From Macrostomum lignano (lineage: Eukaryota): 64,000 nucleotides of DNA. Position 1 is the first letter of the stretch. The number at the start of each line of letters is the position of its first letter. The stretch spans positions 1 through 64,000 of the forward strand of contig NIVC01001060.1 in the NCBI GenBank assembly GCA_002269645.1, in the 5' to 3' direction. The position numbers and the translations under genes are program-made. Of the stretch, positions 9,324 to 53,600 are shown piece by piece. The notes under the pieces are model-generated. The model was not told where the DNA came from. It was given only the letters and a program-made list of their open reading frames with translations, and did not search any database.

Positions 9324-9349
9324 TGTCTATCATTAAATCAGAAATCAAG

Positions 9350-11812
9350 ATGGACATTGATGATCCACCAGTAATCTATGGCCTAGAGACCCAGGCCAGA
9401 GCCCTGTGCTCAGTGCCAGCCTTAGATGACAGCCAGCAGTTTATTATTGGCACTCAAGGCCTTCGAGTTGAGCACAATCAGCTGCATTTATTGACATTTG
9501 ATGCCGACTCCAATAGTGTTAGCAAAAGAATATTTGATCATGGCCGAGATGAGATCTGGTCTGTGTCTGTGGCGCCGCATAACCCCAATCTGTGTGCTAC
9601 TGTTTTTAACAGGTTAGTAGGGTTTTGTTTAATTTTGGTGCTGTTTCAATCTATTTAGCACTATTTGTATCTATTTGGCGCTATTTCCAACCATTTGGTT
9701 CCATTAGAGTCTATTTGGCGCCATTAGAATCCATTTGGCGCCAGTAGGGTCAATTTGGCGCCATTCGAATCCGTTTGGCGCCATTCGAATCCGTTTGGCG
9801 CCATTTGAATCCGTTTGGCGTCATTTAGATATATTTGGCGTCATTATATTTCATTTGGCGCCATTTTCGGATCCATTTGGCGCCATTCGAATCCATTTGG
9901 CGTCATTAGAGTCTATTTGGCGCCATTAGAATCTATTTGGCGCCATTCGAATCAATTTGGCGCCATTCGAATCCATTTGGCGCCATTTGAACTCACTCAA
10001 GTTATTAAATATGACGCAATTGAGATTTTCCTAGCGTCATTTAGACAATTAGATTTAATTGGCATCATTGCGTAGACTTATCAGGCGTCATTAAGTTTAA
10101 TTTTAGGCTCACAGAAAGGTGACTAATAATAAATTATTCAAATTTACCACTTCATTAATTTAGGGTAACCATGGACTCGGGCACGAATCCAAGCGTTGCT
10201 AAGCGCTGGTGCCTATGGAAACTGCCAGAAGAAGAAGACAACCAGACGCCTCGGCATCGAAATAGCTCAGAGGACGCTCTAACCTCGTCTTCATTGTCCT
10301 CAGTTGAATCTCTGCAATCGATTGGTTCTATTGAACTCGAGCAGCAGGGTGAGCCGCGCTGTTTAGCGTTTCATCCGGAAAGAGCGGAAGCCGTGCTGGT
10401 ATCTGACGGCGGGCTGTATCAGCTGGGCCTCGGCAGCGGTGCGGTCCGTCTGTTGGCTCACCTGCCAGCTAAAGACGGTCGATCTCAACTGCGGTACTGG
10501 CATGCGGCTTGGAACCCTCATCATTCTGCTCAGCAGGTGATCGCCGCCTGCGATTCTGGCGGATTAAGAGGCTTCGATGTTCGCTGCCCGCCTAGCGACG
10601 GCCCGGTTGTTGTCATTGACAACGCGCATAATGGACAGGTAAACAGATTGGCATTAGAAATGGCCTTTAAACCTACCCAAGAACCATCTTTGAAACTCAT
10701 GATAGGTCGTCTCAGAAACCTACCCTAAATCACCCCCTAGAAACCTACCCTAAATCACCCTCTAGAAACCTACCCTAAATCACCCCTTAGAAACCTACCC
10801 TAAATCACCCTCTAGAAACCTACCCTAAATCAACCCTAGAAACCTACCCTAAATCACTCCCTAGAAACCTACCCTAAATCACTCCCTAGAAACCTACCCT
10901 AAATCACTCCCTAGTAACCTACCCTAAATCACTCCCTAGTAACCTACCCTAAATCACTCCCTAGTAACCTACCCTAAATCACCCCTAGAAACCTACCCTA
11001 AATCACCCCTAGAAACCTACCCTAAATCACCCCTAGAAACCTAACCTAAATCACCCCTAGAAACCTACCCTAAATCACCCCTAGAAACCTAACCTAAATC
11101 ACTCCCTAAAACCTACCCTAAATCACCCCTAGAAACCTAACCTAAATCACTCCCTAAAACCTACCCTAAATCACCCCTAGAAACCTAACCTAAATCACTC
11201 CCTAAAACCTACCCTAAATCACCCCTAGAAACCTACCCTAAATCACCCCCTAGAAACCTAGCCTAAATCACTCCCTAAAATCTACCCTAAATCACTCCCT
11301 GAAACCCAGCTAAGTAAGCGCCTAAACCTACCCACCACAAGGCTCGGTGCGTGGACTACAACCCGAACAAGCAATACTATTTAGCCAGCTCCGGAGATGA
11401 TGGTGCAATCAGATTCTGGGACACCCGACAACCATCCAATCCTGTGAAGATGCTTCGCCTACACAAGCACTGGGCCTGTTGCGTCCAATTCAACCCCTAC
11501 CATGATCAATTGGTACTGTCTGGCGGTACTGACGCTAAAGTTTATCTAACTAATAATCGTAGCATCTCGTCCGAACCGGTACTGTCTCTAGACGACGATC
11601 TAGACGATGATGACGATGACGACGATAGACGACAGCAGCAGCCAGAGCTAGACGAGGATCGCACTGTGTCAGTTGTTGAAGAACACGAGGATAGCGTCTA
11701 TGCCGCTGTGTGGTGCGCAACGGATCCTTGGCTATTCGCGTCCTTGAGCTACGATGGTCGCCTAGTGATTAGTCACGTGCCTAAAAGCGAGAAGTATCGC
11801 ATTTTGTTGTGA
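9350..11812 (+). CDS. EIPR1: EARP/GARP-interacting WD40 protein (TSSC1/EIPR1), 3 exons, ~402 aa
   Basis: Exons 9350-9612, 10164-10638, 11342-11812 join in frame at GT/AG sites; motifs MDIDDPPVIYGLETQARAL, DYNPNKQYYLASSGDDG, EEHEDSVYAAVW, LSYDGRLVISHVPKSEKYRILL match the EIPR1 family. Confidence 0.95.
9665..9995. repeat. 20-bp minisatellite (GAATCCATTTGGCGCCATTC)n, EIPR1 intron 1
   Basis: Visible periodicity. Confidence 0.9.
10715..11300. repeat. 24-26-bp minisatellite (AGAAACCTACCCTAAATCACCCCT)n, EIPR1 intron 2
   Basis: Visible periodicity; fills most of the intron. Confidence 0.95.
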
Positions 11813-14056: not shown

Positions 14057-15280
14057 ATGTCTTCATCGTCTGACACTTCGCTGGCATCGGCCATGCGCGG
14101 TCGGTACACGCTGAAGATTGGCGACACGTTCGGTTCAACACCGGCCGCCAGGAATCGAGCAAGTTTCTCTACGTTTCGCTACGACTTCATGCCAGCCAGT
14201 GTGGACCAGTCTAAGCCGGGTCTGGTTGAGGTCGGCTCTACAGACGATGTCACGGTTTCGCTTGCTCACGGCTCCGCTAGCAGTCTGTCGCACACTATTT
14301 TCAAAGGTCACAAGCGTCCGTGTCACAAGGATGCCGTGTTAATTCTTGACCCGATCACTCGCGAGGCTCGTATTGAGCGAGTGAATTTGAACGTACAATT
14401 AAAGAAGGCTAGGATTGAAGTGTGCCAATTAGATTTGGTTGAAAAGAAGCTGGGCATGAAAGCGGCTGAAGCGGCATCGGCGGCTACAACTGTGCCGAAA
14501 AAGTCTTCTTCTTCTAGTGGCACTGTTTCTGGTTCGAATAGTCACAAGCAGCCGTCTGTGCAAGCTTCCCATAGAAAGATATCGTCTAGTGAGACTGGTA
14601 AAAGCAAGCCCGAGAAAGCTGCCTCACAGCAGCAGCAGCAGCAGCCACAGAAGAAAAAGAAAAAGAAACACGAGCACGGGACAGACACGGAAGCCGAAGC
14701 TGAGGCTAAACGCGAACGTGAACGCGAAAAAGAACGAGAGAAAGAGAGGGAAAGAGAACGGGAGAGAGAGCGAGAGCAGGAGAGAGAAAAGAAAAAAGCT
14801 CAAAAGAAAAAGGAACTGGAGCAGCAGCAGAAAAAGCAGAAAAAGCAGCCACAACCGCCGGTTGCTAAAAAGTCGAAATCTGAAAAAGTTGTGGCCGCCG
14901 CCACTCTTTCTGATGCTTCATCGGTGTCTTCAGTTTCATCTTCTTCGTTATCCTCATCAGACGATGACGATTCAGATGCTAAGAAGCCTACTCAAGCCCC
15001 GCAGAAGCCGAAATTAAAGAAACAACAACAAAAGTCTTCTCAACCGGCTAAGCCGGCAGTTTTAAATTCTAACGACGATGACGATTCTGTCTCGTCTGAT
15101 TCTTCCGCCTCTTCCGATGAAGAATTCGTCGAAGTCGTCAGTCAGCCTCCAGCGCAGCCTGCAACAACAGCTGCTGCTGTTACTGTTACCACCGCAACAT
15201 CTGCCGCTCCGACAAAAGTGCTCAGCGATTTGGAATTGTTGCAGAATGATCTACAGCTTAGCGATAGCGATACCGATTGA
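14057..15280 (+). CDS. EAF1: ELL-associated factor (EAF1/2 family), intronless, ~407 aa
   Basis: EAF domain (YTLKIGDTF..SFSTFRYDFMPASVD..TIFKGHKRPCHKDAVLI..VQLKKAR) and C-terminal LQNDLQLSDSDTD; candidate acceptor TTTTCACAATAG ending at 14005. Confidence 0.93.
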   Translation: MSSSSDTSLASAMRGRYTLKIGDTFGSTPAARNRASFSTFRYDFMPASVDQSKPGLVEVGSTDDVTVSLAHGSASSLSHTIFKGHKRPCHKDAVLILDPITREARIERVNLNVQLKKARIEVCQLDLVEKKLGMKAAEAASAATTVPKKSSSSSGTVSGSNSHKQPSVQASHRKISSSETGKSKPEKAASQQQQQQPQKKKKKKHEHGTDTEAEAEAKREREREKEREKEREREREREREQEREKKKAQKKKELEQQQKKQKKQPQPPVAKKSKSEKVVAAATLSDASSVSSVSSSSLSSSDDDDSDAKKPTQAPQKPKLKKQQQKSSQPAKPAVLNSNDDDDSVSSDSSASSDEEFVEVVSQPPAQPATTAAAVTVTTATSAAPTKVLSDLELLQNDLQLSDSDTD

Positions 15281-15519
15281 TGATGAAGTGAACACATTCA
15301 ATTTGATCGTGCTCGGGCTAGAATATTTACTATAAGAAATTTGATTTAAATCGTCAGTCTAACCACATCAGTAATAACAAACGTCAGCTTAGATTATGAT
15401 TTTATATAAAACTACACCTTGTATACACTGTGATTTGCTATAAAATGAGGCTAATGTTTATTGAAAAGTATCGATACACGAGTACAACGTCTGAACCTAT
15501 CTTAAACATTCGACTAAAC

Positions 15520-15717
15520 CAGGGGTCGGCACCCTTTTTACCTCAAGATAGAAGATAGAATAGGGAAAAGAGGTGGGATGAAGGAGAGGCGAGGAAATAA
15601 CAGAAGAGAGAAGAGAGCTCAGCGAACCCTTGGGCCGGTCGGTTTGCTATTGTAAGGTTTAATAGGACCCGAGGGCCGGATAGAGAGGCTTTGTGGGCCG
15701 AAGTTTTCCGCCTCCTG
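15520..15717. mobile_element. Decayed hAT (Charlie-like) MITE
   Basis: Left end CAGGGGTCGGCACCC, subterminal GGGCCGGA / GTGGGCCG, degenerate right end CCGCCTCCTG. Confidence 0.5.
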
Positions 15718-15964
15718 AAGTAAAAATTCTCTTCAAGACCTCAATCTGACTTGCGTAGTACGCCTTGGAGTGGAGTGGTACTCCTTGCACAAGATTGGTG
15801 GTTATTGTTTCTAGAGTGACGCTCCTTGTGTCCAGAGTGGCATGTTGTGGGATGATGAAAAAGATAAAGAGCGTTGCATTTAATTTAAAACAGAACAGAC
15901 AAATAAAAATTTAATTTAATTTTCAATCGCAATTGCGGGGTTGAAAGAAAAGCAAATTAAGAAA

Positions 15965-16150
15965 GAGCCTGTCAACTTAAGCTCATGAAGTGGAGCCCAA
16001 GTAACCTATTTGCCCGAATGATACGTCATTCTGCTCACAGTGACACTTGGAAGCTAAGTTTGGCAAAAAACAACAAAATTGGACTTGGGATAGAGAACTA
16101 GCAAGGGGATGATAAAAGACACCACTTTATGAACTTAAGTTGACAGGCCC
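15965..16150. mobile_element. MITE with ~23-bp TIRs (PIF/Harbinger-like terminus)
   Basis: GAGCCTGTCAACTTAAGCTCATG ... ATGAACTTAAGTTGACAGGCCC; no TSD recognised. Confidence 0.65.
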
Positions 16151-16514
16151 TTTGAATTTTCTTATGATTTATAATGCCTTGAACTCCGTTAGCCTGCAGA
16201 AGAATGTGAGAGGGGATTACACTTGTCATAATTATTGACCCCTTGTCTGAATTTGTTTTAATAAAATCTAACATAAGTTTTTGTCTGCTTTCCTAGTTAA
16301 ATGTGACATGTTCCATTGCATACTCTAAAATTGATTGCATTCAATAAATTATATAATCACGGTGATTGTTATCATTTTCATGTGCAGTTCGGCCTTTCAT
16401 AATTGTTAAAATATGTTAAAATTGTTTTAAAAAAATAAAAAAAGTATTTATTTAAATTTAGATATTATCTTAGCAAGTGACATAACAAGTTAAGCAGTCC
16501 CAGGTCTCAGGAAG

Positions 16515-16808
16515 TAGGCATGGGAGTACAGGAAGTAGACACGGGAGTACAGGAAGTGGACATAGGAGTACAGGAAGTAGACATGGTGGCACAGGAAGTA
16601 GACAAGGGACCACATGAAGTAGACATGGGGGCACAGGAAGTGGACATGGGAGTAAAGGAAGTGGACATGGGAGTACAGGAAGTAGACATGGGAGTACAGG
16701 AAGTAGACATGGGGGCACAGGAAGTAGACATGGGAGTACAGGAAGTAGACATGGGAGTACAGGAAGTAGACATGGGAGTACAGGAAGTAGACACAGGGGT
16801 ACAGGAAG
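16515..16808. repeat. 21-bp minisatellite (CATGGGAGTACAGGAAGTAGA)n
   Basis: Visible periodicity directly upstream of the SURF1 acceptor. Confidence 0.95.
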
Positions 16809-16854
16809 GTACAAGTTTGCGCGCTCGCAACTGTTAAATTTCTTTTTCTTGCAG

Positions 16855-19513
16855 TCCAGCTTTCATTGTCAACGAGCGGTGCTGCTCCTACAGCCACTTC
16901 GCTGCTTGAGAAATCCGCATTACCCTTTGCTAGAAGCAGCAAGCCAACATGCTTTCAAATACACGACAGTGCAACGCGGCTACTCCAACTCTTACAAAGG
17001 TCGCGATAGCGACGGTCCTCGTAACAAATGGTTTCTAGCATTTCCAGCAATCTGCTTCTGTTTAGGCACCTGGCAGGTTTATCGACGGCAATGGAAATTG
17101 GATTTGATTGAATCGTTGAATAGGAGAACTACTCAACCGCCTGTGATTGTTGATGGCGGCTCGGTGAAGGAGCTGATGGCTAAGTCTTTAGACGACATGG
17201 AGTTCAGACCTGTTAGAATTATAGGCGAATTCGATCACGATGGCGAGGTTCTGATTGGACCGCGGCATCTTATCGATCCGAAATCAAGTGCTGGTGCTGA
17301 CGGTCAGTTTTGATAATAATATATTTCATACTAATTAGTAGCTAGTGAGAGATATAAAGCCAGTATTTTATAGAGTTCTAATTGATTTTTAAAAAGTTTT
17401 ACTGTTTTAGCTAATAGATAAAACACTTATAAGGACAAGATTTGGTGGTTATTGTTCTAGAGTGACGCTCCTTGTGTCAAGAGTTTTAACAAAGTACAAT
17501 AGGTAACACTACATGTATCTGATACGGTAAAAGTTAATATACTAACTAGGATAATTGGTAATACGCTAATTAGAGAATTATGTGTAATGTACTAATAAGG
17601 GTAATAGGTATAATGCACTAATAAGGGTAATAGGTAATACACTAATTAGGGTAATAGATAATTAGAGTAATTAGATAATTAAATAATTAGGTAATTAGGG
17701 TAATAGTTAATACACTAATTAGGGTAATAGATAAACACTAATTAGGGTAGTAGGTAATACACTAATTAGGATAATTAGTAATACACTAATTCGGGTAATA
17801 GGTACTACCACTAATTAGGGTAATAGGAAATATACTATCTGATACAGTAATAGGTAATACACTATCTGATACGGTAATAGGTAATACACTATCTGATACG
17901 GTAATAGGTAATACACTAATTAGGGTAATAGATAATACACTAATCAGGGCCATAGGTAATACACTAATACGGTAATAGATATTTAAAAACACTAATAAAA
18001 CTCTATCATAACACAAACACCTGTGCAGGCGGCAACAGTCTATTCTCTAGCGGAGCCGGGGTTGGCTATCACGTGATCACTCCGTTCCGATTGGCTGATA
18101 GCGGCGAGCGTGTCCTGGTGAATCGCGGCTGGGTACCGGCTAAGCTGGCCGATCCAGCTACCAGGCCGCAATGGCAGCAGAGAGGCCGAGTGGAATTGAT
18201 CGGTTTGGTGAGGCTGACTGAACCGGCTGGATTGGTTGGAGGCTATCTTGTCGGTGAGGAGCTGCTGATGCTGCTGGTCCATGCTTGAATAAATTTAAGA
18301 TACATGTTGGGTGAAGAAGGTGAAGGGAGCATGGAGACAAGGGTCAGAGATGAAGGCAGCATGTTGGGAAGGGTCAGAGATGAAGGCAGCATGTTGGGAA
18401 GGGTCAGCAATGAAGGCAGCATGTTGGTAAGGGCTAGAGATGAAGGGAGCATGTTAAGAAGGGTCAGAGATGAAGGCAGCATGTTGGGAAGGGTCAGAGA
18501 TGAAGGCAGCGTGTTGGGAAGGGTCAGAGATGAAGGCAGCATGTTGGGAAGGGTCAGAGATAAAGGGAGCATGTTGGGAAGGGTCAGAGATGAAGGCAGC
18601 GTGTTGGGAAGGGTCAGAGATGAAGGCAGCGTGTTGGGAAGGGTCAGAGATGAAGGCAGCATGTTGGGAAGGGTCAGAGATAAAGGGAGCATGTTGGGAA
18701 GGGTCAGAGATAAAGGGAGCATGTTGGGAAGGGTCAGAGATGAAGGCAGCGTGTTGGGAAGGGTCAGAGATGAAGGCAGCATGTTGGGAAGGGTCAGAGA
18801 TAAAGGGAGCATGTTGGGAAGGGTCAGAGATGAAGGCAGCGTGTTGGGAAGGGTCAGAGATGAAGGCAGCGTGTTGGGAAGGGTCAGAGATGAAGGCAGC
18901 GTGTTGGGAAGGGTCAGAGATGAAGGCAGCATGTTGGGAAGGGTCAGAGATAAAGGGAGCATGTTGGGAAGGGTCAGAGATGAAGGCAGCATGTTGGGAA
19001 GGGTCAGAGATAAAGGGAGCATGTTGGGAAGGGTCAGAGATAAAGGCAGCGTGTTGGGAAGGGTCAGAGATGAAGGCAGCGTGTTGGGAAGGGTCAGAGA
19101 TGAAGCCAGCATATTGGGAAGGGTCAGAGATGAAGGGAGCATATTGGGAAGGGTCAGAGATGAAGGCAGAATGTTGGGAAGGGTCAGAGATGAAGGGAGC
19201 ATGCCTTGAATCGCCCGCAGACGCCCGCAGCCCGGCCAACAGCGGCGCTGTCGGGCCTCAGTCTCGGAGCGCTCGCCGCGGCGTCACCTGCCGCATACGC
19301 CGCGATGTCGAGGCTCTGAGCGGCGAGCTCAACACCCTGCCATTCTTTGTTGACGCCTGCGCTTCTGGCGTGGATTCTAGCGAATCTGCTGGCACTTTTC
19401 CTATTGGCGGGCAGACTAGACTGAGCTTGCGTAACGAGCACCTGTCCTATATTGTTACCTGGTATTCTCTGGGCGCGCTGCTGCTGGTGTTCTGGGCTAT
19501 GCGAATTCGATGA
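16855..19513 (+). CDS. SURF1: SURF1 cytochrome c oxidase assembly factor, 3 exons; no genomic start ATG found
   Basis: Exons 16855-17302, 18029-18253, 19221-19513 join in frame; motifs FCLGTWQVYRRQWK, EFRPVRIIGEFDH, LVNRGWVP, PIGGQTRLSLRNEHLSYIVTWYSL. Confidence 0.95.
17560..17995. repeat. ~20-bp minisatellite (CTAATTAGGGTAATAGGTAATACA-type), SURF1 intron 1
   Basis: Visible periodicity. Confidence 0.85.
18335..19203. repeat. 30-bp minisatellite (ATGTTGGGAAGGGTCAGAGATGAAGGCAGC)n, SURF1 intron 2
   Basis: Exact 30-bp phase, ~29 units. Confidence 0.97.
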
Positions 19514-19689
19514 TGGAAGATACATCATAATCTGTGTACTATACATATGCTCTCAGAATTATTTTAGTACTTTATTGACCTATTAAATATTTCATGAAAA
19601 TTATTGTGCTTTTTTAAATAGGCTTCTTACATGGTTTTTCGTTCTTGACTATTTATTTTTCTTTGTTTTAGACATGCTGGGCCCATGCT

Positions 19690-20400
19690 AGAGTTGCTGG
19701 GCCCGCCTCCCAGATCCCCAGTTGCTGAGCCAGCCTCCTAGATCCTCCGTTGCCGGGCCAGCAGCTCCCCAGAGTGTCAGTTGCTGGGCCAGCCTCCCAG
19801 ATCCTCAGTTGCTGGGCCAGCCTCCCAGATTGTCAGTTGCTAGGCCAGCCTCCTAGATTGTCAGTTGCTAGGCCAGCCTCCCAGATCCTCAGTTGCTGGG
19901 CCAGCCTCCCAGATTGTCAGTTACTGGGCCAGCCTCCTAGATTGTCAGTTGCTAGGCCAGCCTCCCAGATCCTCAGTTGCTGGGCCAGCCTCCCAGATAG
20001 TCAGTTACTGGGCCAGCCTCCTAGATCCTCAGTTGCTGGGCCAGCCTCTCAGATCCTCAGTTGCTGGGCCCGCCTCCCAGATCCCCAGTTGCTGAGCCAG
20101 CAGCTTCCCAGAGTGTCAGTTGCTGGGCCAGCCTCCCAGATTGTCAGTTGCTGGGCCAGCCTCCTAGATTGTCAGTTGCTAGGCCAGCCTCCCAGATCCT
20201 CAGTTGCTGGGCCAGCCTCCCAGATTGTCAGTTACTGGGCCAGCCTCCTAAAGTGTCAGTTGCTGGGCCAGCCTCCCAGATCCTCAGTTGCTCGGCCAGC
20301 CTCCCAGATTGTCAGTTGCTGGGCCAGCCTCCTAGATTGTCAGTTGCTAGGCCAGCCTCCCAGATCCTCAGTTGCTGGGCCAGCCTCCCAGATCCCCAGT
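19690..20400. repeat. ~28-30-bp minisatellite (CAGTTGCTGGGCCAGCCTCCCAGAT(TGT/CCT))n in the SURF1-GTF2H2 spacer
   Basis: Visible periodicity. Confidence 0.93.
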
Positions 20401-20474
20401 GAATCATATTGCCAGTCAGTCAAGCAGGCACAGCCCCATGCTTATGCATGCCAAGAGTTTGAACAGCAAACAGC

Positions 20475-22711
20475 ATGGCAAACTACGGATTCGCAAAGCC
20501 GTCTGCGCGACCCACAGCGGGCACCAGCGGCTACCGGCTTCAGGACGAGGATGCGGCCGCGCTCTCTGGCGGCGGCTTTCGCTGGGAGTCGCAGTTCGAG
20601 CGCTCCTGGGAGGCCCTGGCTGAGGATGAGGAGGGTCGCCTGGCTGGGGCTGTTGGGCGTCTGGAGCAGGTGGGTGAATTGTTATTGGGCTCATTGGACT
20701 TATTTAGTTAGCTAGTCAGTCAGTCAGTCAGTCAGACAGTCAGTCAGTCAGTCAGTCAGTCAGTCAGTCAGACAGTCAGTCAGTCAGACAGTCAGTCAGT
20801 CAGTCAGTCAGTCAGTCAGTCAATCAGTCAGTCAATCAGTCAGTCAGTCAGTCAGTCAGTCAGTCAGTCAGTCAGTATCGAACCCCAAACCCCGCAGGCC
20901 CGCAAGCGCCGGCACCGTCTCGCAGCGGCAGCCCTGCTACCCGGCGGCGGTGGCCGGGCCAGCAAGCTGGGCATGATGCGGCACCTGCTGCTGTGCCTGG
21001 ACTGCTCAGAGACCATGGGCTTGGCCGATCTCAAACCCTGCCGTTTAGCCGCCTGCCTATCCGCAATGCGCAACTTCGTGTCCGGATTCTTCGATCAGAA
21101 TCCCATCGGACAGCTGGGCGTACTGCTGACCAGACGGAAGCTGGCCGAGAGAGTGACCGAGCTCACTGGCAATCCCAGGCGACATTTGGACGCGCTAAAA
21201 GATTTGGCTCAGGCCGGCTCGGGCAAAACCGCCCGTCCCGAAGGGGAGGCGTCATTTCAGAACCTGCTGGAGATGGCCTACGACACGCTGGGCCCCCTGC
21301 CAGGCCACGCCTGCAAAGAGGTTCTCGTGCTGGTGTCAGCCTTGAGCACCTGCGATCCGGGAGATATCGGTGCGACCATTAGCAAACTGGCCAAGGCTAG
21401 GATCAGGTGTTCGGTGAGTGAATCATTTCTGTCTGCCTTTTTTTCTTTTATTGTTACTGTTTTTCAAGTCCTAGATCTGTACCCTTCCTACCCTCCTTTC
21501 CCTCTACCCGCTTTCCTCTAATTACCCTCCTTCCCCTCTACCCGCTTTCCCCTCTCTACCCGCCTTGCCCTCTCTACCTGCTTTCCCCTCTACCCGCTTT
21601 CCCCTCTACCCGCTTTCCCCTCTACCCGCTTTCCTCTCTCTACCCGCCTTCCCCTGTCTACCCACCTTCCCCTCTCCACCCGCTTTCCGCTCTACCTGAT
21701 TTCCGCTCTCTCTCGCGTCTCCGCTTCCCTTTCTCTCATTTTACCCTCCCCCCCTTAGATCTCTCCCCTCTATCCTCACTCTCGTCTATCCTTTCTCTAC
21801 CCTCTTTACCCTCTTTCTAATTACTTTCTACCTGATTTCCTCTCTCTCTCTCTCGCGTCCCCGCTTCCCTTTCTCTCATTTTACCCTCCCCCCCCTTAGA
21901 TCTCTCCCCTCTATCCTCACTCTCGTCTATCCTTTGTCTACCCTCTTTACCCTCTTTCTACTTTCTCCCAACGCTTTCCTTCCTAGCCTCTCTCCATCTC
22001 TCTGTCTCTGTTCCGCCATGATGCGTCAAGGGCAAAGTGCAAGCTCTAGGGAACATTGTTTTACCTTCTAAACCTTGCCAATTGGCGTCCCTTTCCCATA
22101 AATTGCCCAATTTACAGGTAATATCTCTGTCAGCGGATATTCGCGTATTGCGCAAACTCGCCCAGGCCACTGGTGGCACCTACTCTGTGCCGCTAGACGC
22201 TGTCCATCTGTCCGACATCATGTCCAGCTTCCTGCCGCCGCCGGCCAGCGCTCCCGATCCCGCTCTGATCAAAATGGGCTTCCCCTACTCGGCTGGGCAG
22301 GATGGCCAGGAGCAGCCGAGATCCAAGCAGGATGTCATCCGCATTTGCGCCTGTCACGGCACCGTACTATCAGCCGGGGCCACCGCTCACGCCTGCCCCC
22401 AGTGCGCCTGTCTTTACTGCGAGCTGCCGGTTGATTGTCGGATTTGCGGATTAAGTTTGGCCAGCGCCGCTCACCTGGCCAGATCCTATCAGCACCTGTT
22501 CCCGTTGAAGGCATTCGCCGAGGTCACCTTGGCGGCCAGTACGGGCTGTTGCGGATGTGGCGATAGACTAGGCGCTAACACGGAAGCCTACCAGTGCAGC
22601 GACTGTCGGTCTCATTATTGTATCGATTGCGATCGGCTGTTGCACGACTCTTTGCACTCTTGCCCAGTTTGTTTGCAGACTTTATCGGTTAAAACTACTA
22701 TCGCTACTTAG
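20475..22711 (+). CDS. GTF2H2: TFIIH p44 subunit (SSL1/GTF2H2), 3 exons
   Basis: Exons 20475 (or 20544)-20669, 20898-21413, 22118-22711 join in frame; RWESQFERSWEAL, LGMMRHL, FFDQNPIGQLG, HLARSYQHLFPL, C-terminal Cys-rich finger. Confidence 0.96.
20712..20875. repeat. (TCAG)n microsatellite, GTF2H2 intron 1
   Basis: Visible. Confidence 0.95.
21480..22010. repeat. C/T-rich minisatellite (CTCTACCCGCTTTCCC-type) plus a ~125-bp duplication, GTF2H2 intron 2
   Basis: Visible. Confidence 0.85.
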
Positions 22712-23455: not shown

Positions 23456-23536
23456 TAGGTCAGGTGTAATTAATTACCATGTGTTTCTAATATATTTCAA
23501 CTCCATCTATTTTTCAGTGTCAACTCTACAACCGCA

Positions 23537-24436
23537 ATGGCAGCCACTTTAGACATTCGTTTGAAGCGTATTAACAAAACCTACACCGATGGCGACACAA
23601 TCTCCGGCTATGCCGTGATTCGTTGCAAACAAGACTGCGGTCACAATGGTCTCACATTGAATCTGACTGGCACAGTGAGCATGCAGCTTAGCTCAAAAAA
23701 TGTCGGAGTATTCGAAGCATTCTATAACAGTATCAAGCCGATTCAACTGACCGGAGCCACACTAGAACTAGCTAAGCCTGGCAAATTCACCACCGGATTA
23801 ACAGAAATCCCATTTGAAATACCGTTCAAATCCAAGGGTAACAAAACACTGTATGAGACATACCACGGAGTGTTCATTAACATTCAGTACGTGCTTCAGT
23901 TGGACTTGAAACGCTCTCTATTGAACAAAGATCTCAGCAAAACTTGCGAATTCTTAGTCGAATACAATCCAAAGAATTCTGGCCAACCGAGCTCGCAGAC
24001 GCCAGTAACTTTCGCCATCAGCCCGGACAGTGTAGTCAATGTTCAGAACAAGGCCAGTCTACCGAAATTTCGCGTCACCGGCCAACTCACATCGAGTCAC
24101 ATTAGTATTTCTGAGCCACTGAGTGGCGAGCTAGTCATTGAGCAGTGCGCTACTCGGATTAAAAGTGTAGAACTGCAGCTGGTACGCGTAGAGACCTGCG
24201 GCTGTCTGGAAGGCTACGCTAAAGAGACTACTGAGATACAGAATATCCAAGTGGCTGATGGAGACGCTCCCAGAGGGATTAAAATCCCTCTGCACATGGT
24301 GCTGCCGCGTCTGTTCACCTGTCCGAGCGTTTCGGCTACCAATTTCCGAATCGAATTCGAAGTCAACATTGTTGTCGTGTTTCAAGACGACTATTTGGTG
24401 TCTGAAAATATTCATATTCGTGTTAGTAGATTCTGA
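23537..24436 (+). CDS. VPS26C: Retriever subunit VPS26C (DSCR3), intronless, 299 aa
   Basis: TLDIRLKRINKTY, YETYHGVFINIQY, SVELQLVRVETCGCLEGYAKETTEIQNIQVADGD, LPRLFTCP; TTTTCAG acceptor ending at 23517. Confidence 0.96.
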   Translation: MAATLDIRLKRINKTYTDGDTISGYAVIRCKQDCGHNGLTLNLTGTVSMQLSSKNVGVFEAFYNSIKPIQLTGATLELAKPGKFTTGLTEIPFEIPFKSKGNKTLYETYHGVFINIQYVLQLDLKRSLLNKDLSKTCEFLVEYNPKNSGQPSSQTPVTFAISPDSVVNVQNKASLPKFRVTGQLTSSHISISEPLSGELVIEQCATRIKSVELQLVRVETCGCLEGYAKETTEIQNIQVADGDAPRGIKIPLHMVLPRLFTCPSVSATNFRIEFEVNIVVVFQDDYLVSENIHIRVSRF

Positions 24437-26646: not shown

Positions 26647-26823
26647 ATGGCCACCTTTACCTGCCAGTCAACTCAGTGCTCAAAGTACAACAAGACTACT
26701 GCTACTAATACTACTACTACTACCAAGCATAATCACTTCTGCAAGCATGACTGCCAACATGGCTTCAATGGTGACTCCGCCAATGACGGATGCCAGTGGT
26801 GGAGATTTCTCTTCATATCTTAA
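26647..26823 (+). promoter_or_regulatory. uORF2 (58 aa), overlapping the main ORF out of frame by 77 nt
   Basis: GCCAACATGG context; open to TAA at 26821-26823; spans main-frame ATGs at 26747, 26759, 26768 and 26783. Confidence 0.7.
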
Positions 26824-29834: not shown

Positions 29835-31922
29835 GGGGTGCCAAATGGAGTGTCATATGGAGTGTCAAACGGGGTGCCAAATGGAGTGCCAAATGAAGTG
29901 CCAAATGGAATGTCAAACGGGGTATCAAATGGAGTGTCAAATGGAATGTCAAACGGGGTGTCAAATGGAGTGCCAAATAGAGTGCCAAATTGGGTGTCAA
30001 ATGGAGTGCCAAATAGAATTTCAAACGGGGTGTCAAATGGAGTGCCAAATGGAATGTCAAACTGGGTGTCAAATGGAGTGCCAAATGCGGTGTCAAATGG
30101 AGTGTCAAATGGAGTGCCAAATGGAATGTCAAACTGTGTGTCAAATGGAGTGCCAAATGAAGTGCCAAATAGAGTGCCAAATGGAATGTCAAACTGTGTG
30201 TCAAATGGAGTGCCAAATGGGGTGTCAAATGGAGTGTCAAATGGAGTGCCAAATGGAGTGCCAAATAGAGTGCCAAATAGAGTGCTAAATGGAATGTCAA
30301 ACTGGGTGTCAAATGGAGTGCCAAATGGGGTGTCAAATGGAGTGCCAAATGGAGTGCCAAACGGGGTGCCAAATAGAGTGCCAAATGGAATGTCAAATGG
30401 AGTGCCAAACGGAGTGCCAAATGGAGTGCCAAATGAAGTGCCAAATAGAGTGCCAAATGGAATGTCAAACTGGGTGTCAAATGGAGTGCCAAATGGAATG
30501 TCAAACTGGGTGTCAAATGGCGTGCCAAATGGAATGTCAAATGGAGTGCCAAATAGAATGTCAAACGGGGTGCCAAATGGAGTGCCAAATGGATTGCCAA
30601 ATGGGGTGTCAAATGGAATGTCAAATGGAGTGCCAAATGGAGTGCCAAATGGGGTGTCAAATGGAATGTCAAATGGAGTGCCAAATGGAATGTCAAACGG
30701 GGTGCCAAATGCAGTGCCAAATGGATTGCCAAATGGGGTGTCAAATGGAATGTCAAATGGGGTGTCAAATGGAGTGTCAAATGGATTGCCAAATGGAGTG
30801 CCAAATGGGGTGTCAAATGGAATGTCAAATGGAGTGCCAAATGGAATGCCAAACGGGGTGCCAAATGGAGTGCCAAATGGATTGCCAAATGGGGTGTCAA
30901 ATGGAATGTCAAATGGGGTGTCAAATGGAGTGTCAAATGGAGTGCCAAATGGAGTGCCAAATAGAGTGCCAAATGGAATGTCAAACTGGGTGTCAAATGG
31001 AGTGCCAAATGGGGTGTCAAATGGAGTGCCAAATGGAGTGCCAAACGGGGTGCCAAATAGATTGCCAAATGTAATGTCAAACTGGGTGTCAAATGGAGTG
31101 CCAAATGGGGTGTCAAATGGAGTGCCAAATGGAGTGCCAAACGGAGTGCCAAATGGAGTGCCAAATGAAGTGCCAAATAGAGTGCCAAATGGAATGTCAA
31201 ACTGGGTGTCAAATGGAGTGCCAAATGGAATGTCAAACTGGGTGTCAAATGGCGTGCCAAATGGAATGTCAAATGGAGTGCCAAATGGAATGTCAAATGG
31301 AGTGCCAAACGGAGTGCCAAATGGAGTGCCAAATGAAGTGCCAAATAGAGTGCCAAATGGAATGTCAAACTGGGTGTCAAATGGAGTGCCAAATGGAATG
31401 TCAAACTGGGTGTCAAATGGCGTGCCAAATGGAATGTCAAATGGAGTGCCAAATGGAATGTCAAATGGAGTGCCAAACGGAGTGCCAAATGGAGTGCCAA
31501 ATGAAGTGCCAAATAGAGTGCCAAATGGAATGTCAAACTGGGTGTCAAATGGAGTGCCAAATGGAATGTCAAACTGGGTGTCAAATGGCGTGCCAAATGG
31601 AGTGCCAAATGGAGTGCCAAATGGGGTGTCAAATGGAGTGCCAAATGGATTGCCAAATGGGGTGTCAAATGGAATGTCAAACGGGGTGTCAAATGGAGTG
31701 CCAAATGGAGTGCCAAATGGGGTGTCAAATGGAGTGCCAAATAGATTGCCAAATGGGGTGTCAAATGGAATGTCAAATGGGGTGTCAAATGGAGTGTCAA
31801 ACGGAGTGTTAAATGAAGTGCCAAATGGAGTGCCAAATGGGGTGTCAAATGGAGTGTCAAACGGAGTGTCAAATGAAGTGCCAAATGGAGTGCCAAATTG
31901 GGTGTCAAATGGAGTGTCAAAC
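29835..31922. repeat. 12-bp minisatellite (GTG(C/T)CAAATGGA)n, ~2.1 kb
   Basis: Uninterrupted 12-bp phase with higher-order blocks. Confidence 0.97.
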
Positions 31923-45364: not shown

Positions 45365-46655
<1,291 letters not shown>

Positions 46656-47309
46656 TGTTTTACTGTAGCTTACCTCAACTTCTAAATTTGCCATACAATA
46701 TTAAGAAGAAAAATTAAAGAAAATTTAAGTAGCCAAAGTCAGCAAAAATCATTTATGGACGCAATTATTGATTATTGAATGTTTGAAGATAATAATAAGC
46801 TCATCAAGAATTACCCATTACAGGTGAGTGGCGTGTAGCTGGGTAAAGAGTTCTGGGGACAAACACTCGCTGTGACAAAAATTATTAGGATTAATTTTTC
46901 GAGCATTGAAGGCCTTCAAAATAATAAAACTAAAAACAAGTTGCTTACCAGGCTATCAAATATCTATTTAAAACGTATCGATAAAACATGTAAGTAAAAG
47001 GCTTGACGAACGAACACGAAAGAAAATCTTTATATTAGGAGTAATAATATTAATTATTTGTGAGTGCAATAAGTACATCAACATAATTTTAATTTGAAGG
47101 AGTGGTACAGAGACAGATTACCTTTTAGTATACCTTTTTCGGTATACTACGAGCGTAATTACGTCAGAAAAAAGTTTTGAACGAACACGAAAGACCGGAA
47201 AGGGAAAGACGAATATGACTGATTGATAAACGGAAAAGCTTTGAGGAGACGAAGGAAAAGATTCTGTAGGATAGTAAAATGACATGTCAAGCGGCTGGGA
47301 CAGGAAGGC

Positions 47310-50636: not shown

Positions 50637-50649
50637 GTAAGGAGTCTAC

Positions 50650-53600
50650 TCACTGTCACTCACTGTAACTCACTGTAACTCACTGTAACTCACTGTAACT
50701 CACTGTAACTCACTGTAACTCACTGTAACTCATTGTAACTCATCATTGTAACTCACTGTAGCTCACTGTAACTCACTGTAACTCACTGTCACTCACTGTA
50801 ACTCACTGTCACTCACTGTAACTCACTGTAACTCACTGTAACTCACTGTAACTCACTGTAACTCACTGTAACTCACTGTAACTCATCACTGTAACTCACT
50901 GTAACTCACTGTAGCTCACTGTAACTCACTGTAGCTCATCACTGTAACTCACTGTAGCTCACTGTAACTCACTGTAACTCACTGTAACTCACTGTAACTC
51001 ACTGTAACTCACTGTAACTCACTGTAACTCACTGTAACTCACTGTAACTCACTGTAACTCACTGTAACTCACTGTAACTCACTGTAACTCACTGTAACTC
51101 ACTGTAACTCACTGTAACTCACTGTAGCTCACCGTAACTCACAGTAACTCACTGTAACTCACTGTAACTCACTGTAACTCACTGTAACTCACTGTAACTC
51201 ACTGTAGCTCACTGTAACTCACTGTAACTCACTGTAACTCACTGTAGCTCACTGTAGCTCACTGTAACTCACTGTAGCTCACTGTAACTCACTGAAACTC
51301 ACTGTAACTCATCATTGTAACTCACTGTAACTCACTGTAACTCACTGTAGCTCACTGTAGCTCACTGTAACTCGCTGAAACTCACTGTAGCTCACCGTAA
51401 CTCACTGTAACTCATCATTGTAACTCACTGTAACTCACTGTAACTCACTGTAGCTCACTGTAACTCACTGTAACTCATCATTGTAACTCACTGTAACTCA
51501 CTGTAACTCACTGTAGCTCACCGTAACTCACTGTAACTCACTGTAGCTCACTGTAACTCACTGTAGCTCACCGTAACTCACTGTAGCTCACCGTAACTCA
51601 CTGTAACTCACTGTAACTCACTGTAGCTCACTGTAACTCACTGTAACTCATTTTAACTCACTGTAGCTCACTGTAACTCACTGTAGCTCACCGTAACTCA
51701 CTGTAGCTCACTGTAGCTCACTGTCACTCACTGTAACTCACTGTAACTCACTGTAACTCACTGTAACTCACTGTAGCTCACCGTAACTCACTGTAACTCA
51801 CTGTAACTCACTGTAGCTCACTGTAAATCACTGTAACTCACTGTAACTCACTGTAGCTCACTGTAGCTCACTGTAACTCACTGTAACTCACTGTAACTCA
51901 CTGTAACTCACTGTAGCTCACCGTAACTCACTGTAGCTCACTGTAACTCACTGTAACTCACTGTAGCTCACCGTAACTCACTGTAACTCACTGTAACTCA
52001 CTGTAACTCACTGTAGCTCACTGTAACTCACTGTAACTCACTGTAACTCATTTTAACTCACTGTAGCTCACTGTAACTCACTGTAGCTCACTGTAACTCA
52101 CTGTAGCTCACTGTAACTCTCTGTAGCTCACCGTAACTCACTGTAACTCATCACTGTAACTCACTGTAACTCACTGTAGCTCACTGTAACTCACTGTGGC
52201 TCATCACTGTAACTCACTGTAGCTCACTGTAACTCACTGTAACTCACTGTAACTCACTGTAACTCACTGTAACTCACTGTAACTCACTGTAACTCACTGT
52301 AACTCACTGTAACTCACTGTAACTCACTGTAACTCACTGTAACTCACTGTAACTCACTGTAACTCACTGTAACTCACTGTAACTCACTGTAGCTCACCGT
52401 AACTCACTGTAACTCACTGTAACTCACTGTAACTCACTGTAACTCACTGTAACTCACTGTAACTCACTGTAGCTCACTGTAACTCACTGTAACTCACTGT
52501 AACTCACTGTAGCTCACTGTAGCTCACTGTAACTCACTGTAGCTCACTGTAACTCACTGAAACTCACTGTAACTCATCATTGTAACTCACTGTAACTCAC
52601 TGTAACTCACTGTAGCTCACTGTAGCTCACTGTAACTCGCTGAAACTCACTGTAGCTCACCGTAACTCACTGTAACTCATCATTGTAACTCACTGTAACT
52701 CACTGTAACTCACTGTAGCTCACTGTAACTCACTGTAACTCACTGTAACTCACTGTAACTCACTGTAACTCACTGTAGCTCACCGTAACTCACAGTAACT
52801 CACTGTAACTCACTGTAACTCACTGTAACTCACTGTAACTCACTGTAACTCACTGTAGCTCACTGTAACTCACTGTAACTCACTGTAACTCACTGTAGCT
52901 CACTGTAGCTCACTGTAACTCACTGTAGCTCACTGTAACTCACTGAAACTCACTGTAACTCATCATTGTAACTCACTGTAACTCACTGTAACTCACTGTA
53001 GCTCACTGTAGCTCACTGTAACTCGCTGAAACTCACTGTAGCTCACCGTAACTCACTGTAACTCATCATTGTAACTCACTGTAACTCACTGTAACTCACT
53101 GTAGCTCACTGTAACTCACTGTAACTCATCATTGTAACTCACTGTAACTCACTGTAACTCACTGTAGCTCACCGTAACTCACTGTAACTCACTGTAGCTC
53201 ACTGTAACTCACTGTAGCTCACCGTAACTCACTGTAGCTCACCGTAACTCACTGTAACTCACTGTAACTCACTGTAGCTCACTGTAACTCACTGTAACTC
53301 ATTTTAACTCACTGTAGCTCACTGTAACTCACTGTAGCTCACCGTAACTCACTGTAGCTCACTGTAGCTCACTGTCACTCACTGTAACTCACTGTAACTC
53401 ACTGTAACTCACTGTAACTCACTGTAGCTCACCGTAACTCACTGTAACTCACTGTAACTCACTGTAGCTCACTGTAAATCACTGTAACTCACTGTAACTC
53501 ACTGTAGCTCACTGTAGCTCACTGTAACTCACTGTAACTCACTGTAACTCACTGTAACTCACTGTAGCTCACCGTAACTCACTGTAGCTCACTGTAACTC

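What the first reader, a model, noticed from the sequence alone, without database searches (positions are those of the whole stretch)
16809..16900. SURF1 has no genomic start codon: the initiator AUG is probably supplied by the spliced leader
The strong acceptor TTTCTTTTTCTTGCAG (ending at 16854) is followed in phase 0 by S-S-F-H-C-Q-R-A-V-L-L-L-Q-P-L-R-C-L-R, a plausible mitochondrial presequence. The first in-frame Met comes only after the conserved N-terminal TM segment. The ATGs of the upstream 21-bp repeat are out of frame if spliced from the GT at 16809, and the one ATG in the right phase (16614) stops after two codons. Flatworm SL exons characteristically end in AUG, which is known to act as an initiator; joining it here gives a full ~322-aa SURF1.
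Basis: partly seen in the sequence, partly recalled or inferred. Interest (0 to 1): 0.75.

Follow-up and report, generated by a model that had tools for sequence, protein, structure and literature searches.

The report
SURF1 start codon from spliced leader
The flatworm Macrostomum lignano's SURF1 gene (a cytochrome oxidase assembly factor) has no usable start codon in the genome and most likely takes its AUG from the trans-spliced leader RNA, a mechanism already known in flatworms, so this is a tidy new example and an annotation fix rather than a new phenomenon.

Summary
The window is the first 64 kb of M. lignano scaffold NIVC01001060.1. SURF1 has three exons: 16855-17302, 18029-18253 and 19221-19513. 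Exon 1 starts directly after TTTCTTTTTCTTGCAG. The reading frame has no genomic ATG until residue 109 (17176), which lies beyond the presequence, the first transmembrane helix and 11 residues invariant across orthologues. All three GenBank paralogue models are marked 5'-partial. The WormBase/UniRef models start at Met109 and so lose the first helix.

The published M. lignano spliced leader ends in ...TTGCATG, and the acceptor fits the species' trans-splice motif [T/C]TNCAG. Joining the leader here is in frame and gives a 322-aa protein whose N-terminal length is normal for the family. In a diverged paralogue an in-frame TAG closes the frame just upstream, and that model begins right after the AG, still in frame with the leader's ATG.

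No leader-containing read or cDNA could be inspected, so the trans-splice itself is inferred. One rival remains possible: a 14-codon cis-spliced micro-exon (ATG 16164, donor 16206). It is no more than chance would produce and is absent from every transcript-based model.

Initiation from the leader's AUG was shown in schistosomes in 2006 and has been noted for Macrostomum. Verdict: interpretation supported (about 0.8); a new member of a known kind; modest interest.

The parts
16508..16808 (+). 21-bp minisatellite (CAGGAAGTAGACATGGGAGTA, 14.3 copies) in the presumed outron. Its ATGs are not usable for SURF1.
   Evidence: TRF; phase-0 donors inside it are only GGA|GTACAG or GAA|GTAGAC types; those donors score -2.9 to -6.2 bits, against +2.3 and +3.5 for the gene's real donors; about 52 copies with frame-shifting 20-bp variants in paralogue L003.
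16615..16617 (+). Nearest upstream stop (TGA) in the SURF1 frame. There is no in-frame ATG between it and 16855.
16809..16810 (+). It is in phase 1 relative to the repeat ATGs, so out of frame, and it is a weak donor.
   Evidence: (-0.1 bits). In L003 the -1 G is A.
16839..16854 (+). Polypyrimidine tract plus acceptor TTTCTTTTTCTTGCAG. This is the proposed spliced-leader trans-splice acceptor.
   Evidence: It matches the M. lignano trans-splice motif [T/C]TNCAG (PMC8629364). It is conserved in L002. L003 has TTTCTTCTTCTAGCAG.
16855..17302 (+). SURF1 exon 1 (codons 2-150 plus 1 nt). It has no initiator codon of its own. Donor is ACG|GTCAGT.
16855..16986 (+). Presequence-like N-terminus (residues 2-45). 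Residues 1-27 carry +3 charge and no acidic residue. There is an R-3 type motif RGY|S at residues 42-45.
   Evidence: These are composition and motif checks only; no dedicated predictor was available.
17029..17079 (+). First transmembrane helix (WFLAFPAICFCLGTWQV, residues 60-76), upstream of the first genomic Met.
   Evidence: hydropathy. (invariant P65, L71, G72, W74, Q75, R78, R79, W81, K82, L83, L85). (Pfam match starts at residue 64).
17176..17178 (+). First in-frame genomic ATG (Met109). It is the start of the truncated 214-aa WormBase/UniRef models.
18029..18253 (+). SURF1 exon 2 (acceptor gtgcag|G, donor TCG|GTGAGG).
19221..19513 (+). SURF1 exon 3 with second transmembrane helix (residues 303-319) and stop TGA at 19511-13. 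ATTAAA at 19582.
16164..16211 (+). Rival candidate: 14-codon micro-exon ATG...AAT|GTGAGA (MIYNALNSVSLQKN), in phase 0 with 16855.
   Evidence: the only GTRAG candidate in 1.6 kb; present in L002 and L003. (+3.2 bits). (46 % of simulated sequences give at least one such candidate).
14057..15280 (+). Upstream same-strand gene, an EAF homologue. AATAAA signals at 15902, 16260, 16343 and 16434 lie between it and the SURF1 acceptor.

Best explanation
The SURF1 pre-mRNA of Macrostomum lignano (gene Mlig021063.g2) is trans-spliced at the acceptor ending at 16854. The 35-nt spliced leader, which ends in ...UUGCAUG, is joined directly to UCC AGC UUU CAU. The leader's 3'-terminal AUG becomes codon 1 of a 322-aa SURF1: M-SSFHCQRAVLLLQPLRCLR..., with a mitochondrial presequence, then the first helix, the intermembrane-space domain and the second helix. 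The upstream sequence, including the 21-bp minisatellite, is outron and is discarded.

Shown here:
- The genome has no usable in-frame ATG.
- The acceptor fits the trans-splice motif and the junction is in phase.
- The N-terminal length is normal for the family.
- All transcript-based models are 5'-partial.

Taken from the literature:
- The species' leader ends in AUG.
- Flatworm leader AUGs can initiate translation.

Inferred:
- That this particular mRNA is trans-spliced at this site.
- That ribosomes start at the leader's AUG.
For: 1. Species and leader. Searches identify M. lignano. PMC8629364 gives the leader sequence ending in ATG and the acceptor motif [T/C]TNCAG. The window has TTGCAG.
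2. Frame. The acceptor is in phase 0, and there are 107 open codons with no ATG before Met109.
3. Residues 60-108 must be translated. They contain the first helix and 11 residues invariant in 10 animal orthologues. The Pfam SURF1 match starts at residue 64.
4. N-terminal length. With the leader's Met, GxWQ is at residue 72, against 50 orthologues with median 62, IQR 46-69 and maximum 83. The composition is presequence-like.
5. Annotation. Three GenBank paralogue models built from RNA-seq are all '5' partial'. The annotation pipeline trimmed the whole leader and cut transcripts at trans-splice peaks (PMC5730564). Neighbouring WD40 and Vps26 models start 2 and 1 nt after a TTTTCAG acceptor, which shows that behaviour directly.
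6. Paralogue L003. A T-to-A change creates an in-frame TAG immediately before CAG-TCC, so no upstream read-through is possible. That model starts exactly after the AG (QSSFH...), 3 nt upstream and still in frame with the leader's ATG.
7. Operon distance. After subtracting the repeat, about 120-650 nt separate the upstream polyA signals from the acceptor. This is within the published limit of under 1 kb for M. lignano operons.
8. Precedent. PMC9851317 cites Cheng et al. 2006: more than 40 S. mansoni cDNAs need the leader's AUG. PMC3510090 reports E. granulosus mitochondrial genes. The S. mansoni leader ends in the same TTGCATG. PMC10468722 calls the Macrostomum leader's ATG a start codon.
Against: - No leader-containing read, EST or cDNA for this gene could be examined. 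No M. lignano transcript-derived protein starting MSSFH exists in the protein collection.
- The g2 and g4 models start at 16865-16867, which is 10-12 nt downstream of the acceptor rather than exactly at it. This fits a 5'-truncated assembly but is not proof of a trans-splice peak.
- A cis-spliced micro-exon (16164-16205) with a donor as good as the gene's real donors would also give an in-frame ATG.
- The context of the leader's AUG (U at -3) is poor by vertebrate rules.
- Differences between paralogues in exon 1 are 4 nonsynonymous and 0 synonymous, and the first 53 codons are identical. There is therefore no selection signal on the presequence.
Confidence: 0.8

Rival explanations
1. A short cis-spliced first exon supplies the ATG. 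Transcription starts around 16110-16160. The exon runs from ATG 16164 through 14 codons (MIYNALNSVSLQKN) to donor AAT|GTGAGA at 16206. A 649-nt intron containing the minisatellite is removed, joining in phase 0 to 16855.
For:: this is the only ATG...|GTRAG phase-0 candidate in the 1.6 kb upstream. It is present in L002 and L003, where the one difference (AAT to AAC) is synonymous; the donor scores +3.2 bits, comparable with the real SURF1 donors at +2.3 and +3.5; the surrounding 16100-16507 is 98 % identical between paralogues and almost free of indels. PMC12582326: flatworm acceptors are often shared between cis- and trans-splicing.
Against:: 46 % of composition-matched random sequences contain at least one such candidate (mean 0.61), so its presence carries no weight. 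None of three RNA-seq/StringTie-based GenBank models, nor the WormBase models, contains it; all are 5'-partial or start at Met109. It would put GxWQ at residue 86, beyond the maximum of 83 in 50 orthologues. The ATG has T at -3. AATAAA signals at 16260, 16343 and 16434 follow it, so it may lie in the 3'UTR of the upstream EAF gene. The substitution rate in 16100-16507 (1.7 %) is no lower than in introns or 3'UTR (1.2-1.8 %).
Confidence: 0.08
2. An ATG inside the 21-bp minisatellite is used, spliced from one of the phase-0 GTs within the repeat (for example ATG GGA|GTACAG or ...GAA|GTAGAC) to the 16854 acceptor.
The ATG frame is open through the array (105-codon ORF 16520-16837).
Against:: every such donor scores -2.9 to -6.2 bits, and none matches the species' GT[G/A]AG motif. 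The array is hypervariable, with 14 copies here and about 52 in L003, including 20-bp units that shift the frame. The last repeats before the acceptor in L003 have ATA instead of ATG. No annotated transcript includes it.
Confidence: 0.02
3. Translation starts inside exon 1 from the genome alone. It begins either at Met109 (17176), giving the 214-aa protein of the WormBase/UniRef models, or at a near-cognate non-AUG codon upstream of the first helix.
For:: UniRef A0A1I8HSX4 and A0A1I8H5Y1 are modelled from Met109. Non-AUG initiation exists in eukaryotes (PMC9851317).
Against: A Met109 start deletes the presequence, the first helix and 11 invariant residues, and removes the first 43 residues of the Pfam domain match. 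The 107 upstream codons are open and conserved with orthologues, which is unexpected for a 5'UTR. If the mRNA carries the leader, its AUG is the first AUG a scanning ribosome meets.
Confidence: 0.05
4. The locus is a decaying or mis-assembled copy. The missing ATG reflects a pseudogene or an assembly gap, with the true first exon elsewhere.
For: M. lignano is a hidden polyploid with many duplicated genes. The L003 model is C-terminally frameshifted to 254 aa.
Against: There are no Ns in 15000-20000. All three exons are intact, with both helices and all family-invariant residues present. The same ATG-less structure occurs in three separate scaffolds. The L003 truncation comes from the choice of an alternative acceptor in the model, not from a DNA lesion.
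Confidence: 0.03

Closest known systems
Flatworm mRNAs that use the spliced leader's 3'-terminal AUG as initiator methionine (Cheng, Cohen, Ndegwa & Davis 2006, J Biol Chem 281:733; Schistosoma, Echinococcus)
   Same: The leader ends in ...TTGCATG, identical in its last 7 nt to the S. mansoni leader. The acceptor is in phase 0 with a conserved ORF that has no genomic AUG able to give the orthologous N-terminus. Nuclear-encoded mitochondrial proteins are among the known examples (COX6B and an NADH-ubiquinone oxidoreductase subunit in E. granulosus).
   Different: The species is a free-living, early-branching macrostomorph rather than a parasitic neodermatan. The trans-spliced junction and initiation were not observed here. 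SURF1 was not found named as such a case in the papers read. Other flatworm SURF1 models (Heterobilharzia, Fasciola, Dibothriocephalus, Schistocephalus) begin with their own Met, so the dependence may be lineage-specific.
SURF1/Shy1 family (Pfam PF02104), cytochrome c oxidase assembly factor of the inner mitochondrial membrane
   Same: Full-length domain match, N- and C-terminal transmembrane helices, the invariant GxWQxxRRxWKL and VNRGW motifs, and 39-45 % identity to animal orthologues.
   Different: The initiator codon is not encoded at the locus. The protein also has a short Gly/Ser/Arg-rich insertion (about residues 220-250) absent from the aligned orthologues.
slORFs: ORFs created by start codons within spliced leaders (slORFfinder, PMC9851317)
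   Same: The start codon is contributed by the leader, and the ORF is invisible to genome-only gene finders.
   Different: Here the leader's AUG does not create a novel ORF. It completes a conserved housekeeping ORF.

Membership tests
SURF1/Shy1 family (PF02104) | Significant match to the SURF1 profile over its full length | tested here: met
   E = 2.9e-44, 152 bits (cut-off 23.4), residues 64-311, profile positions 2-205 of 205.
SURF1/Shy1 family (PF02104) | Two transmembrane helices, one near each end, flanking a large loop | tested here: met
   the two top hydropathy peaks are at residues 60-76 and 303-319.
SURF1/Shy1 family (PF02104) | Conserved N-terminal GxWQxxRxxWK motif and central NRGW motif | tested here: met
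   G72, W74, Q75, R78, R79, W81, K82, N182, R183 and G184 are invariant with 9 orthologues.
SURF1/Shy1 family (PF02104) | Mitochondrial targeting presequence in eukaryotic members | tested here: inconclusive
   +3 charge and no acidic residue in the first 27 aa; RGY|S R-3 motif at residues 42-45. No dedicated predictor (TargetP, MitoFates) was available.
Flatworm mRNAs initiated at the spliced leader's AUG (Cheng et al. 2006 class) | The species has a spliced leader whose last three nucleotides are AUG | tested here: met
   From the literature: PMC8629364 gives the 35-nt leader ending GCATG. PMC10468722 confirms conservation in the genus. The leader RNA gene itself is not in the window.
Flatworm mRNAs initiated at the spliced leader's AUG (Cheng et al. 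2006 class) | The mRNA is trans-spliced at the acceptor in question | not testable with these tools
   Indirect evidence only. The acceptor fits [T/C]TNCAG. The 5'-partial transcript models start at or near it, and the L003 model starts exactly after the AG. No reads or cDNAs were reachable.
Flatworm mRNAs initiated at the spliced leader's AUG (Cheng et al. 2006 class) | The leader's AUG is in frame with the main ORF with no intervening stop | tested here: met
   ATG|TCC AGC ... gives 321 open codons to TGA at 19511. L003: ATG|CAG TCC ... is also in frame.
Flatworm mRNAs initiated at the spliced leader's AUG (Cheng et al. 2006 class) | No genomic AUG can give the phylogenetically conserved N-terminus, so the leader's AUG is required | tested here: met
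   the first genomic AUG is residue 109, after the first helix. Caveat: one chance-level cis micro-exon candidate remains.
Flatworm mRNAs initiated at the spliced leader's AUG (Cheng et al. 2006 class) | Translation demonstrably starts at the leader's AUG | not testable with these tools
   This needs ribosome profiling, a reporter or protein data.

The most novel reading that the evidence does not exclude
In M. lignano, SURF1 depends entirely on spliced-leader trans-splicing for its initiator codon, and so cytochrome c oxidase assembly does too. This dependence has been kept through gene duplication, including a paralogue whose acceptor moved by exactly one codon (TAG|CAG) and stayed in frame. 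It would be one visible member of a large class of leader-AUG-dependent genes that the current GenBank and WormBase annotations systematically record as '5' partial' or N-terminally truncated, because the leader's ATG was trimmed. If other flatworm SURF1 genes really keep a genomic ATG, this would also be a datable case of a housekeeping gene losing its own start codon to the leader.
Probability: 0.5. Interest if true: 0.4.

Novelty: new member of a known kind. Interest (0 to 1): 0.3.

Why it matters
The practical value is in annotation. The GenBank entries PAA72799.1, PAA94267.1 and PAA68451.1 are flagged partial. The UniRef/WormBase models are cut to 214 aa and lack the targeting sequence and first membrane helix. 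The correct product is probably a 322-aa protein whose first codon is not in the genome.

The case also shows that genome-only or leader-trimmed pipelines in Macrostomum will mis-model every gene of this type. Two neighbouring genes in this window are also annotated 5'-partial for the same technical reason.

Biologically it extends leader-AUG initiation, which was demonstrated in parasitic flatworms, to an early-branching free-living model that has working transgenesis. In that species the requirement could be tested directly. It does not reveal a new mechanism.

Tried and rejected
- **Rfam scan of the window.** No hits, so there is no leader RNA gene or other known RNA here.
- **Leader 3' 13-mer search.** One 1-mismatch hit on the minus strand at 16338-16350, with no donor after it. 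14 of 100 shuffles do as well, so this is chance.
- **Direct transcript evidence.** The protein collection holds only five members of this 90 % cluster, all genome-derived, and none starts MSSFH. The best Logan hit (P0002/L004) comes from an unrelated organism. Its 5' end is what I recognise as a SMART template-switch oligo, not a spliced leader.
- **Gene-specific published evidence.** No paper mentions Mlig021063, and PMC8629364 has no supplementary tables held. Cheng et al. 2006 is not held, so it is cited through three papers that summarise it.
- **Selection test on the presequence.** Comparing paralogues was uninformative: 4 nonsynonymous and 0 synonymous differences, with the first 53 codons identical.
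- **Apparent extra conservation of 16100-16507.** It is 98 % identical, against about 95 % just upstream. On calibration it was unremarkable: substitution rates in introns and 3'UTR are similar (1.2-1.8 %) and only indels differ.
- **Donors within the repeat.** Rejected on score.
- **Acceptor at 16858-59 (TCCAG|C).** Rejected because the leader's ATG would then be out of frame and would terminate after about 50 codons (read from the sequence).
- **Whether SURF1's leader-AUG dependence is shared across flatworms.** Most neodermatan models begin with their own Met, so there is no support for that.
Full report
**What is at the coordinates**

- A 16-nt tract, TTTCTTTTTCTTGCAG, ends at 16854. From 16855 the frame reads SSFHCQRAVLLLQPLRCLR....
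- The frame continues without a stop to a donor, ACG|GTCAGT, at 17303.
- A protein search with exons 1 and 2 gave a 100 % match to 'hypothetical protein BOX15_Mlig021063g4, partial [Macrostomum lignano]', followed by SURF1 proteins of many animals at 39-48 % identity.
- The window is base-for-base the first 64 kb of scaffold NIVC01001060.1 of assembly GCA_002269645.1 (Mlig_3_7). Window and record coordinates coincide.

**Gene model**

Mapping the GenBank protein onto the window gives three exons.
- The exons are 16855-17302, 18029-18253 and 19221-19513, with TGA at 19511-13.
- The spliced genomic CDS is 963 nt plus the stop codon, which is 321 codons, and it translates exactly to the expected protein.
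- Pfam SURF1 (PF02104) matches residues 64-311 over the whole profile, with E = 2.9e-44.
- The two strongest hydrophobic segments are residues 60-76 and 303-319, the usual two-helix SURF1 topology.

**The missing start codon**

- The first in-frame genomic ATG is at 17176, residue 109.
- Residues 60-108 contain the first helix and 11 positions that are invariant in an alignment with nine animal orthologues: P65, L71, G72, W74, Q75, R78, R79, W81, K82, L83 and L85. This stretch must therefore be translated.
- Upstream of 16855 the same frame stays open through a 21-bp minisatellite (16508-16808) back to TGA at 16615-17, with no ATG.
The repeat ATGs reach the GT at 16809 in phase 1. The ATG at 16614 is in phase with that GT but reads ATG AAG TAG.

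**How existing annotations treat the gene**

- Three GenBank models from three scaffolds (PAA72799.1, PAA94267.1, PAA68451.1) are all labelled 'partial'. They begin CQRAV..., CQRAV... and QSSFHCQRAV....
- The two UniRef/WormBase models begin at Met109 (MAKSLDD..., 214 aa) and so lack the presequence and the first helix.
- No annotation has found a start codon.

**Why the spliced leader is the likely source of the start codon**

1. *The leader and the acceptor motif.* M. lignano uses a single 35-nt leader, CGGTCTCTTACTGCGAAGACTCAATTTATTGCATG. About 30 % of its genes are trans-spliced, and the enriched motif at trans-splice acceptors is [T/C]TNCAG (PMC8629364). The window has TTGCAG.
2. *Frame and length.* Joining ...GCATG to TCCAGC puts the leader's ATG in frame and gives 322 aa. 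The GxWQ motif then falls at residue 72. In 50 eukaryote-type orthologues that start with Met, the same motif has a median position of 62, an IQR of 46-69 and a maximum of 83. The new N-terminus has three Arg and no acidic residue in its first 27 positions, and an RGY|S motif at residues 42-45. This fits a matrix-targeting presequence, but it was not tested with a dedicated predictor.
3. *How the annotation was built.* The Mlig_3_7 annotation trimmed the leader from reads and transcripts, then cut transcripts at trans-splice peaks before calling ORFs (PMC5730564). A gene that starts at the leader's AUG must therefore appear as a 5'-partial CDS. Two neighbours in this window show the pipeline doing exactly that. 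The WD40/EIPR1-like CDS (9326) begins 2 nt after a TTTTCAG acceptor, and the Vps26 CDS (23519) begins 1 nt after one. For those two genes the leader's ATG is out of frame and a genomic ATG follows a few codons later.
4. *The diverged paralogue L003 (Mlig032346.g2).* Its acceptor region reads TTTCTTCTTCTAGCAG|TCC. The T-to-A change creates an in-frame TAG two codons before TCC, so read-through from upstream is impossible in that copy. Its annotated CDS starts at the CAG immediately after that AG. Trans-splicing there would give M-Q-S-S-F-H, which is still in frame.
5. *Gene neighbourhood.* The neighbouring genes all lie on the + strand: WD40, EAF homologue, SURF1, Ssl1/GTF2H2, Vps26 and bZIP. 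AATAAA signals follow the EAF homologue at 15902, 16260, 16343 and 16434. After subtracting the 301-nt repeat, about 120-650 nt remain before the acceptor. This is within the repeat-adjusted limit of under 1 kb used to call M. lignano operons.

**Rivals**

A full enumeration shows that the repeat ATGs are in phase 0 with other GTs inside the repeat (GGA|GTACAG, GAA|GTAGAC and variants). With a generic metazoan donor matrix taken from my own knowledge, not species-specific, these score -2.9 to -6.2 bits. The two real SURF1 donors score +2.3 and +3.5. None matches the species' GT[G/A]AG motif. The array is also hypervariable. It has 14 copies here and about 52 in L003, with 20-bp units that shift the frame and ATA in place of ATG in the last repeats. 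I consider this rival very unlikely.

An ATG at 16164 is followed by 14 codons (MIYNALNSVSLQKN) and the donor AAT|GTGAGA at 16206. It is in phase 0 with 16855, is present in all three paralogues, and scores +3.2 bits. Four points count against it.
- Simulation shows that 46 % of composition-matched sequences of this length contain at least one equally good candidate.
- No transcript-based model includes it.
- It would make the N-terminus longer than in any of the 50 orthologues examined.
- The apparent conservation around it is not unusual once calibrated against introns and 3'UTRs.

It cannot be excluded without reads. I give it about 0.08.

*Start within exon 1.* A start at Met109 or at a non-AUG codon is disfavoured by the conservation of residues 60-108.

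*Pseudogene or misassembly.* This is disfavoured by the intact three-exon ORF, the absence of Ns, and the same structure on three scaffolds.

**Comparison with what is known**

- All reported flatworm spliced leaders end in AUG, and that AUG can serve as initiator (Cheng et al. 2006, summarised in PMC12582326, and PMC9851317).
- In E. granulosus, 143 of 187 leader-bearing clusters were full length using the leader's ATG. These include mitochondrial proteins such as COX6B. Use of the leader's AUG was conserved among neodermatans (PMC3510090).
- The S. mansoni leader ends in the same TTGCATG (PMC5832876).

The mechanism is therefore known, and is expected in this species. What is new is only the specific gene and the correction to its models.

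Other flatworm SURF1 models begin with their own Met and a presequence-like N-terminus (Heterobilharzia, Fasciola, Dibothriocephalus, Schistocephalus). The dependence may therefore be specific to the Macrostomum lineage. Those models were not checked at the DNA level.

**Limits**

- The trans-spliced junction itself was not seen.
- The g2 and g4 models start 10-12 nt downstream of the acceptor (16865-16867), not at it. I attribute this to 5'-truncated transcript assembly. RNA-seq was mapped end to end, so leader-bearing reads cannot align over the junction, and the two copies are identical, so reads map to both. That attribution is an inference.
- Comparing paralogues gave no selection signal for the presequence.

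**Verdict**

The finding is a new member of a known kind. Interest is modest (0.3), and lies mainly in correcting the annotation and in offering a convenient test case in a transgenic-capable flatworm.

Noticed in passing
window 16508-16808 (and L003 8861-9960): The 21-bp minisatellite unit contains ACAGGAAGT, which I recall as an ETS-type core. It occurs 11 times here, all in this array, against 0.74 expected in the whole window. The array sits directly upstream of the SURF1 acceptor and has expanded from 14 to about 52 copies in the paralogue. From memory, the mammalian Surf1/Surf2 promoter and many respiratory-chain genes are ETS/GABP-regulated. This could be coincidence in a minisatellite-rich genome.
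   Followed up: partly
window 9324-9350 and 23518-23540: The GenBank CDSs of the WD40/EIPR1-like gene and of Vps26 are also 5'-partial. They begin 2 and 1 nt after a TTTTCAG acceptor. The leader's ATG would be out of frame there, and genomic ATGs follow 8 and 6 codons later. So the 'partial' flags are by-products of trimming the leader, and the leader's AUG would open a short overlapping upstream frame.
   Followed up: partly
window 20470-20477 and 26742-26749: The start codons of Ssl1/GTF2H2 (ATG 20475) and of the bZIP gene (ATG 26747) both sit in AG|C-ATG. The five bases GCATG are identical to the 3' end of the spliced leader and come right after a possible acceptor AG.
   Followed up: no
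window 19218-19230; L003 12536 region: Two CAG acceptors lie 10 nt apart at the start of SURF1 exon 3. The L003 GenBank model uses the downstream one. This shifts the frame and ends the protein at 254 aa without the second transmembrane helix, although the DNA there is identical to the window. It is either alternative splicing or a model error.
   Followed up: partly
window 14057-15280: The upstream same-strand gene is an EAF (ELL-associated factor) homologue (PF09816, E = 1.1e-17) with a long acidic/lysine-rich, low-complexity tail. Its GenBank CDS is also 5'-partial, starting 11 codons before the ATG at a position not preceded by AG.
   Followed up: partly
window 50648-64000: A 13.3-kb array of a 10-bp satellite, ACTCACTGTA (about 1324 copies, 91 % matches), fills the end of the window and explains the constant GC skew of -0.44. 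Many other minisatellites occupy introns and intergenic DNA, for example (CTGT)n at 45367-46658 and a 36-bp unit at 29839-31921.
   Followed up: no
window 16338-16350 (- strand): AATTTATTGAATG matches the last 13 nt of the spliced leader with one mismatch. No splice donor follows it, and 14 of 100 shuffles give such a hit, so it is probably chance.
   Followed up: yes
SURF1 residues ~220-250 (window 19221-19310): M. lignano SURF1 carries a Gly/Ser/Arg/Pro-rich insertion (DARSPANSGAVGPQSRSARRGVTC) at the exon 2/3 junction that is absent from the nine aligned orthologues.
   Followed up: no
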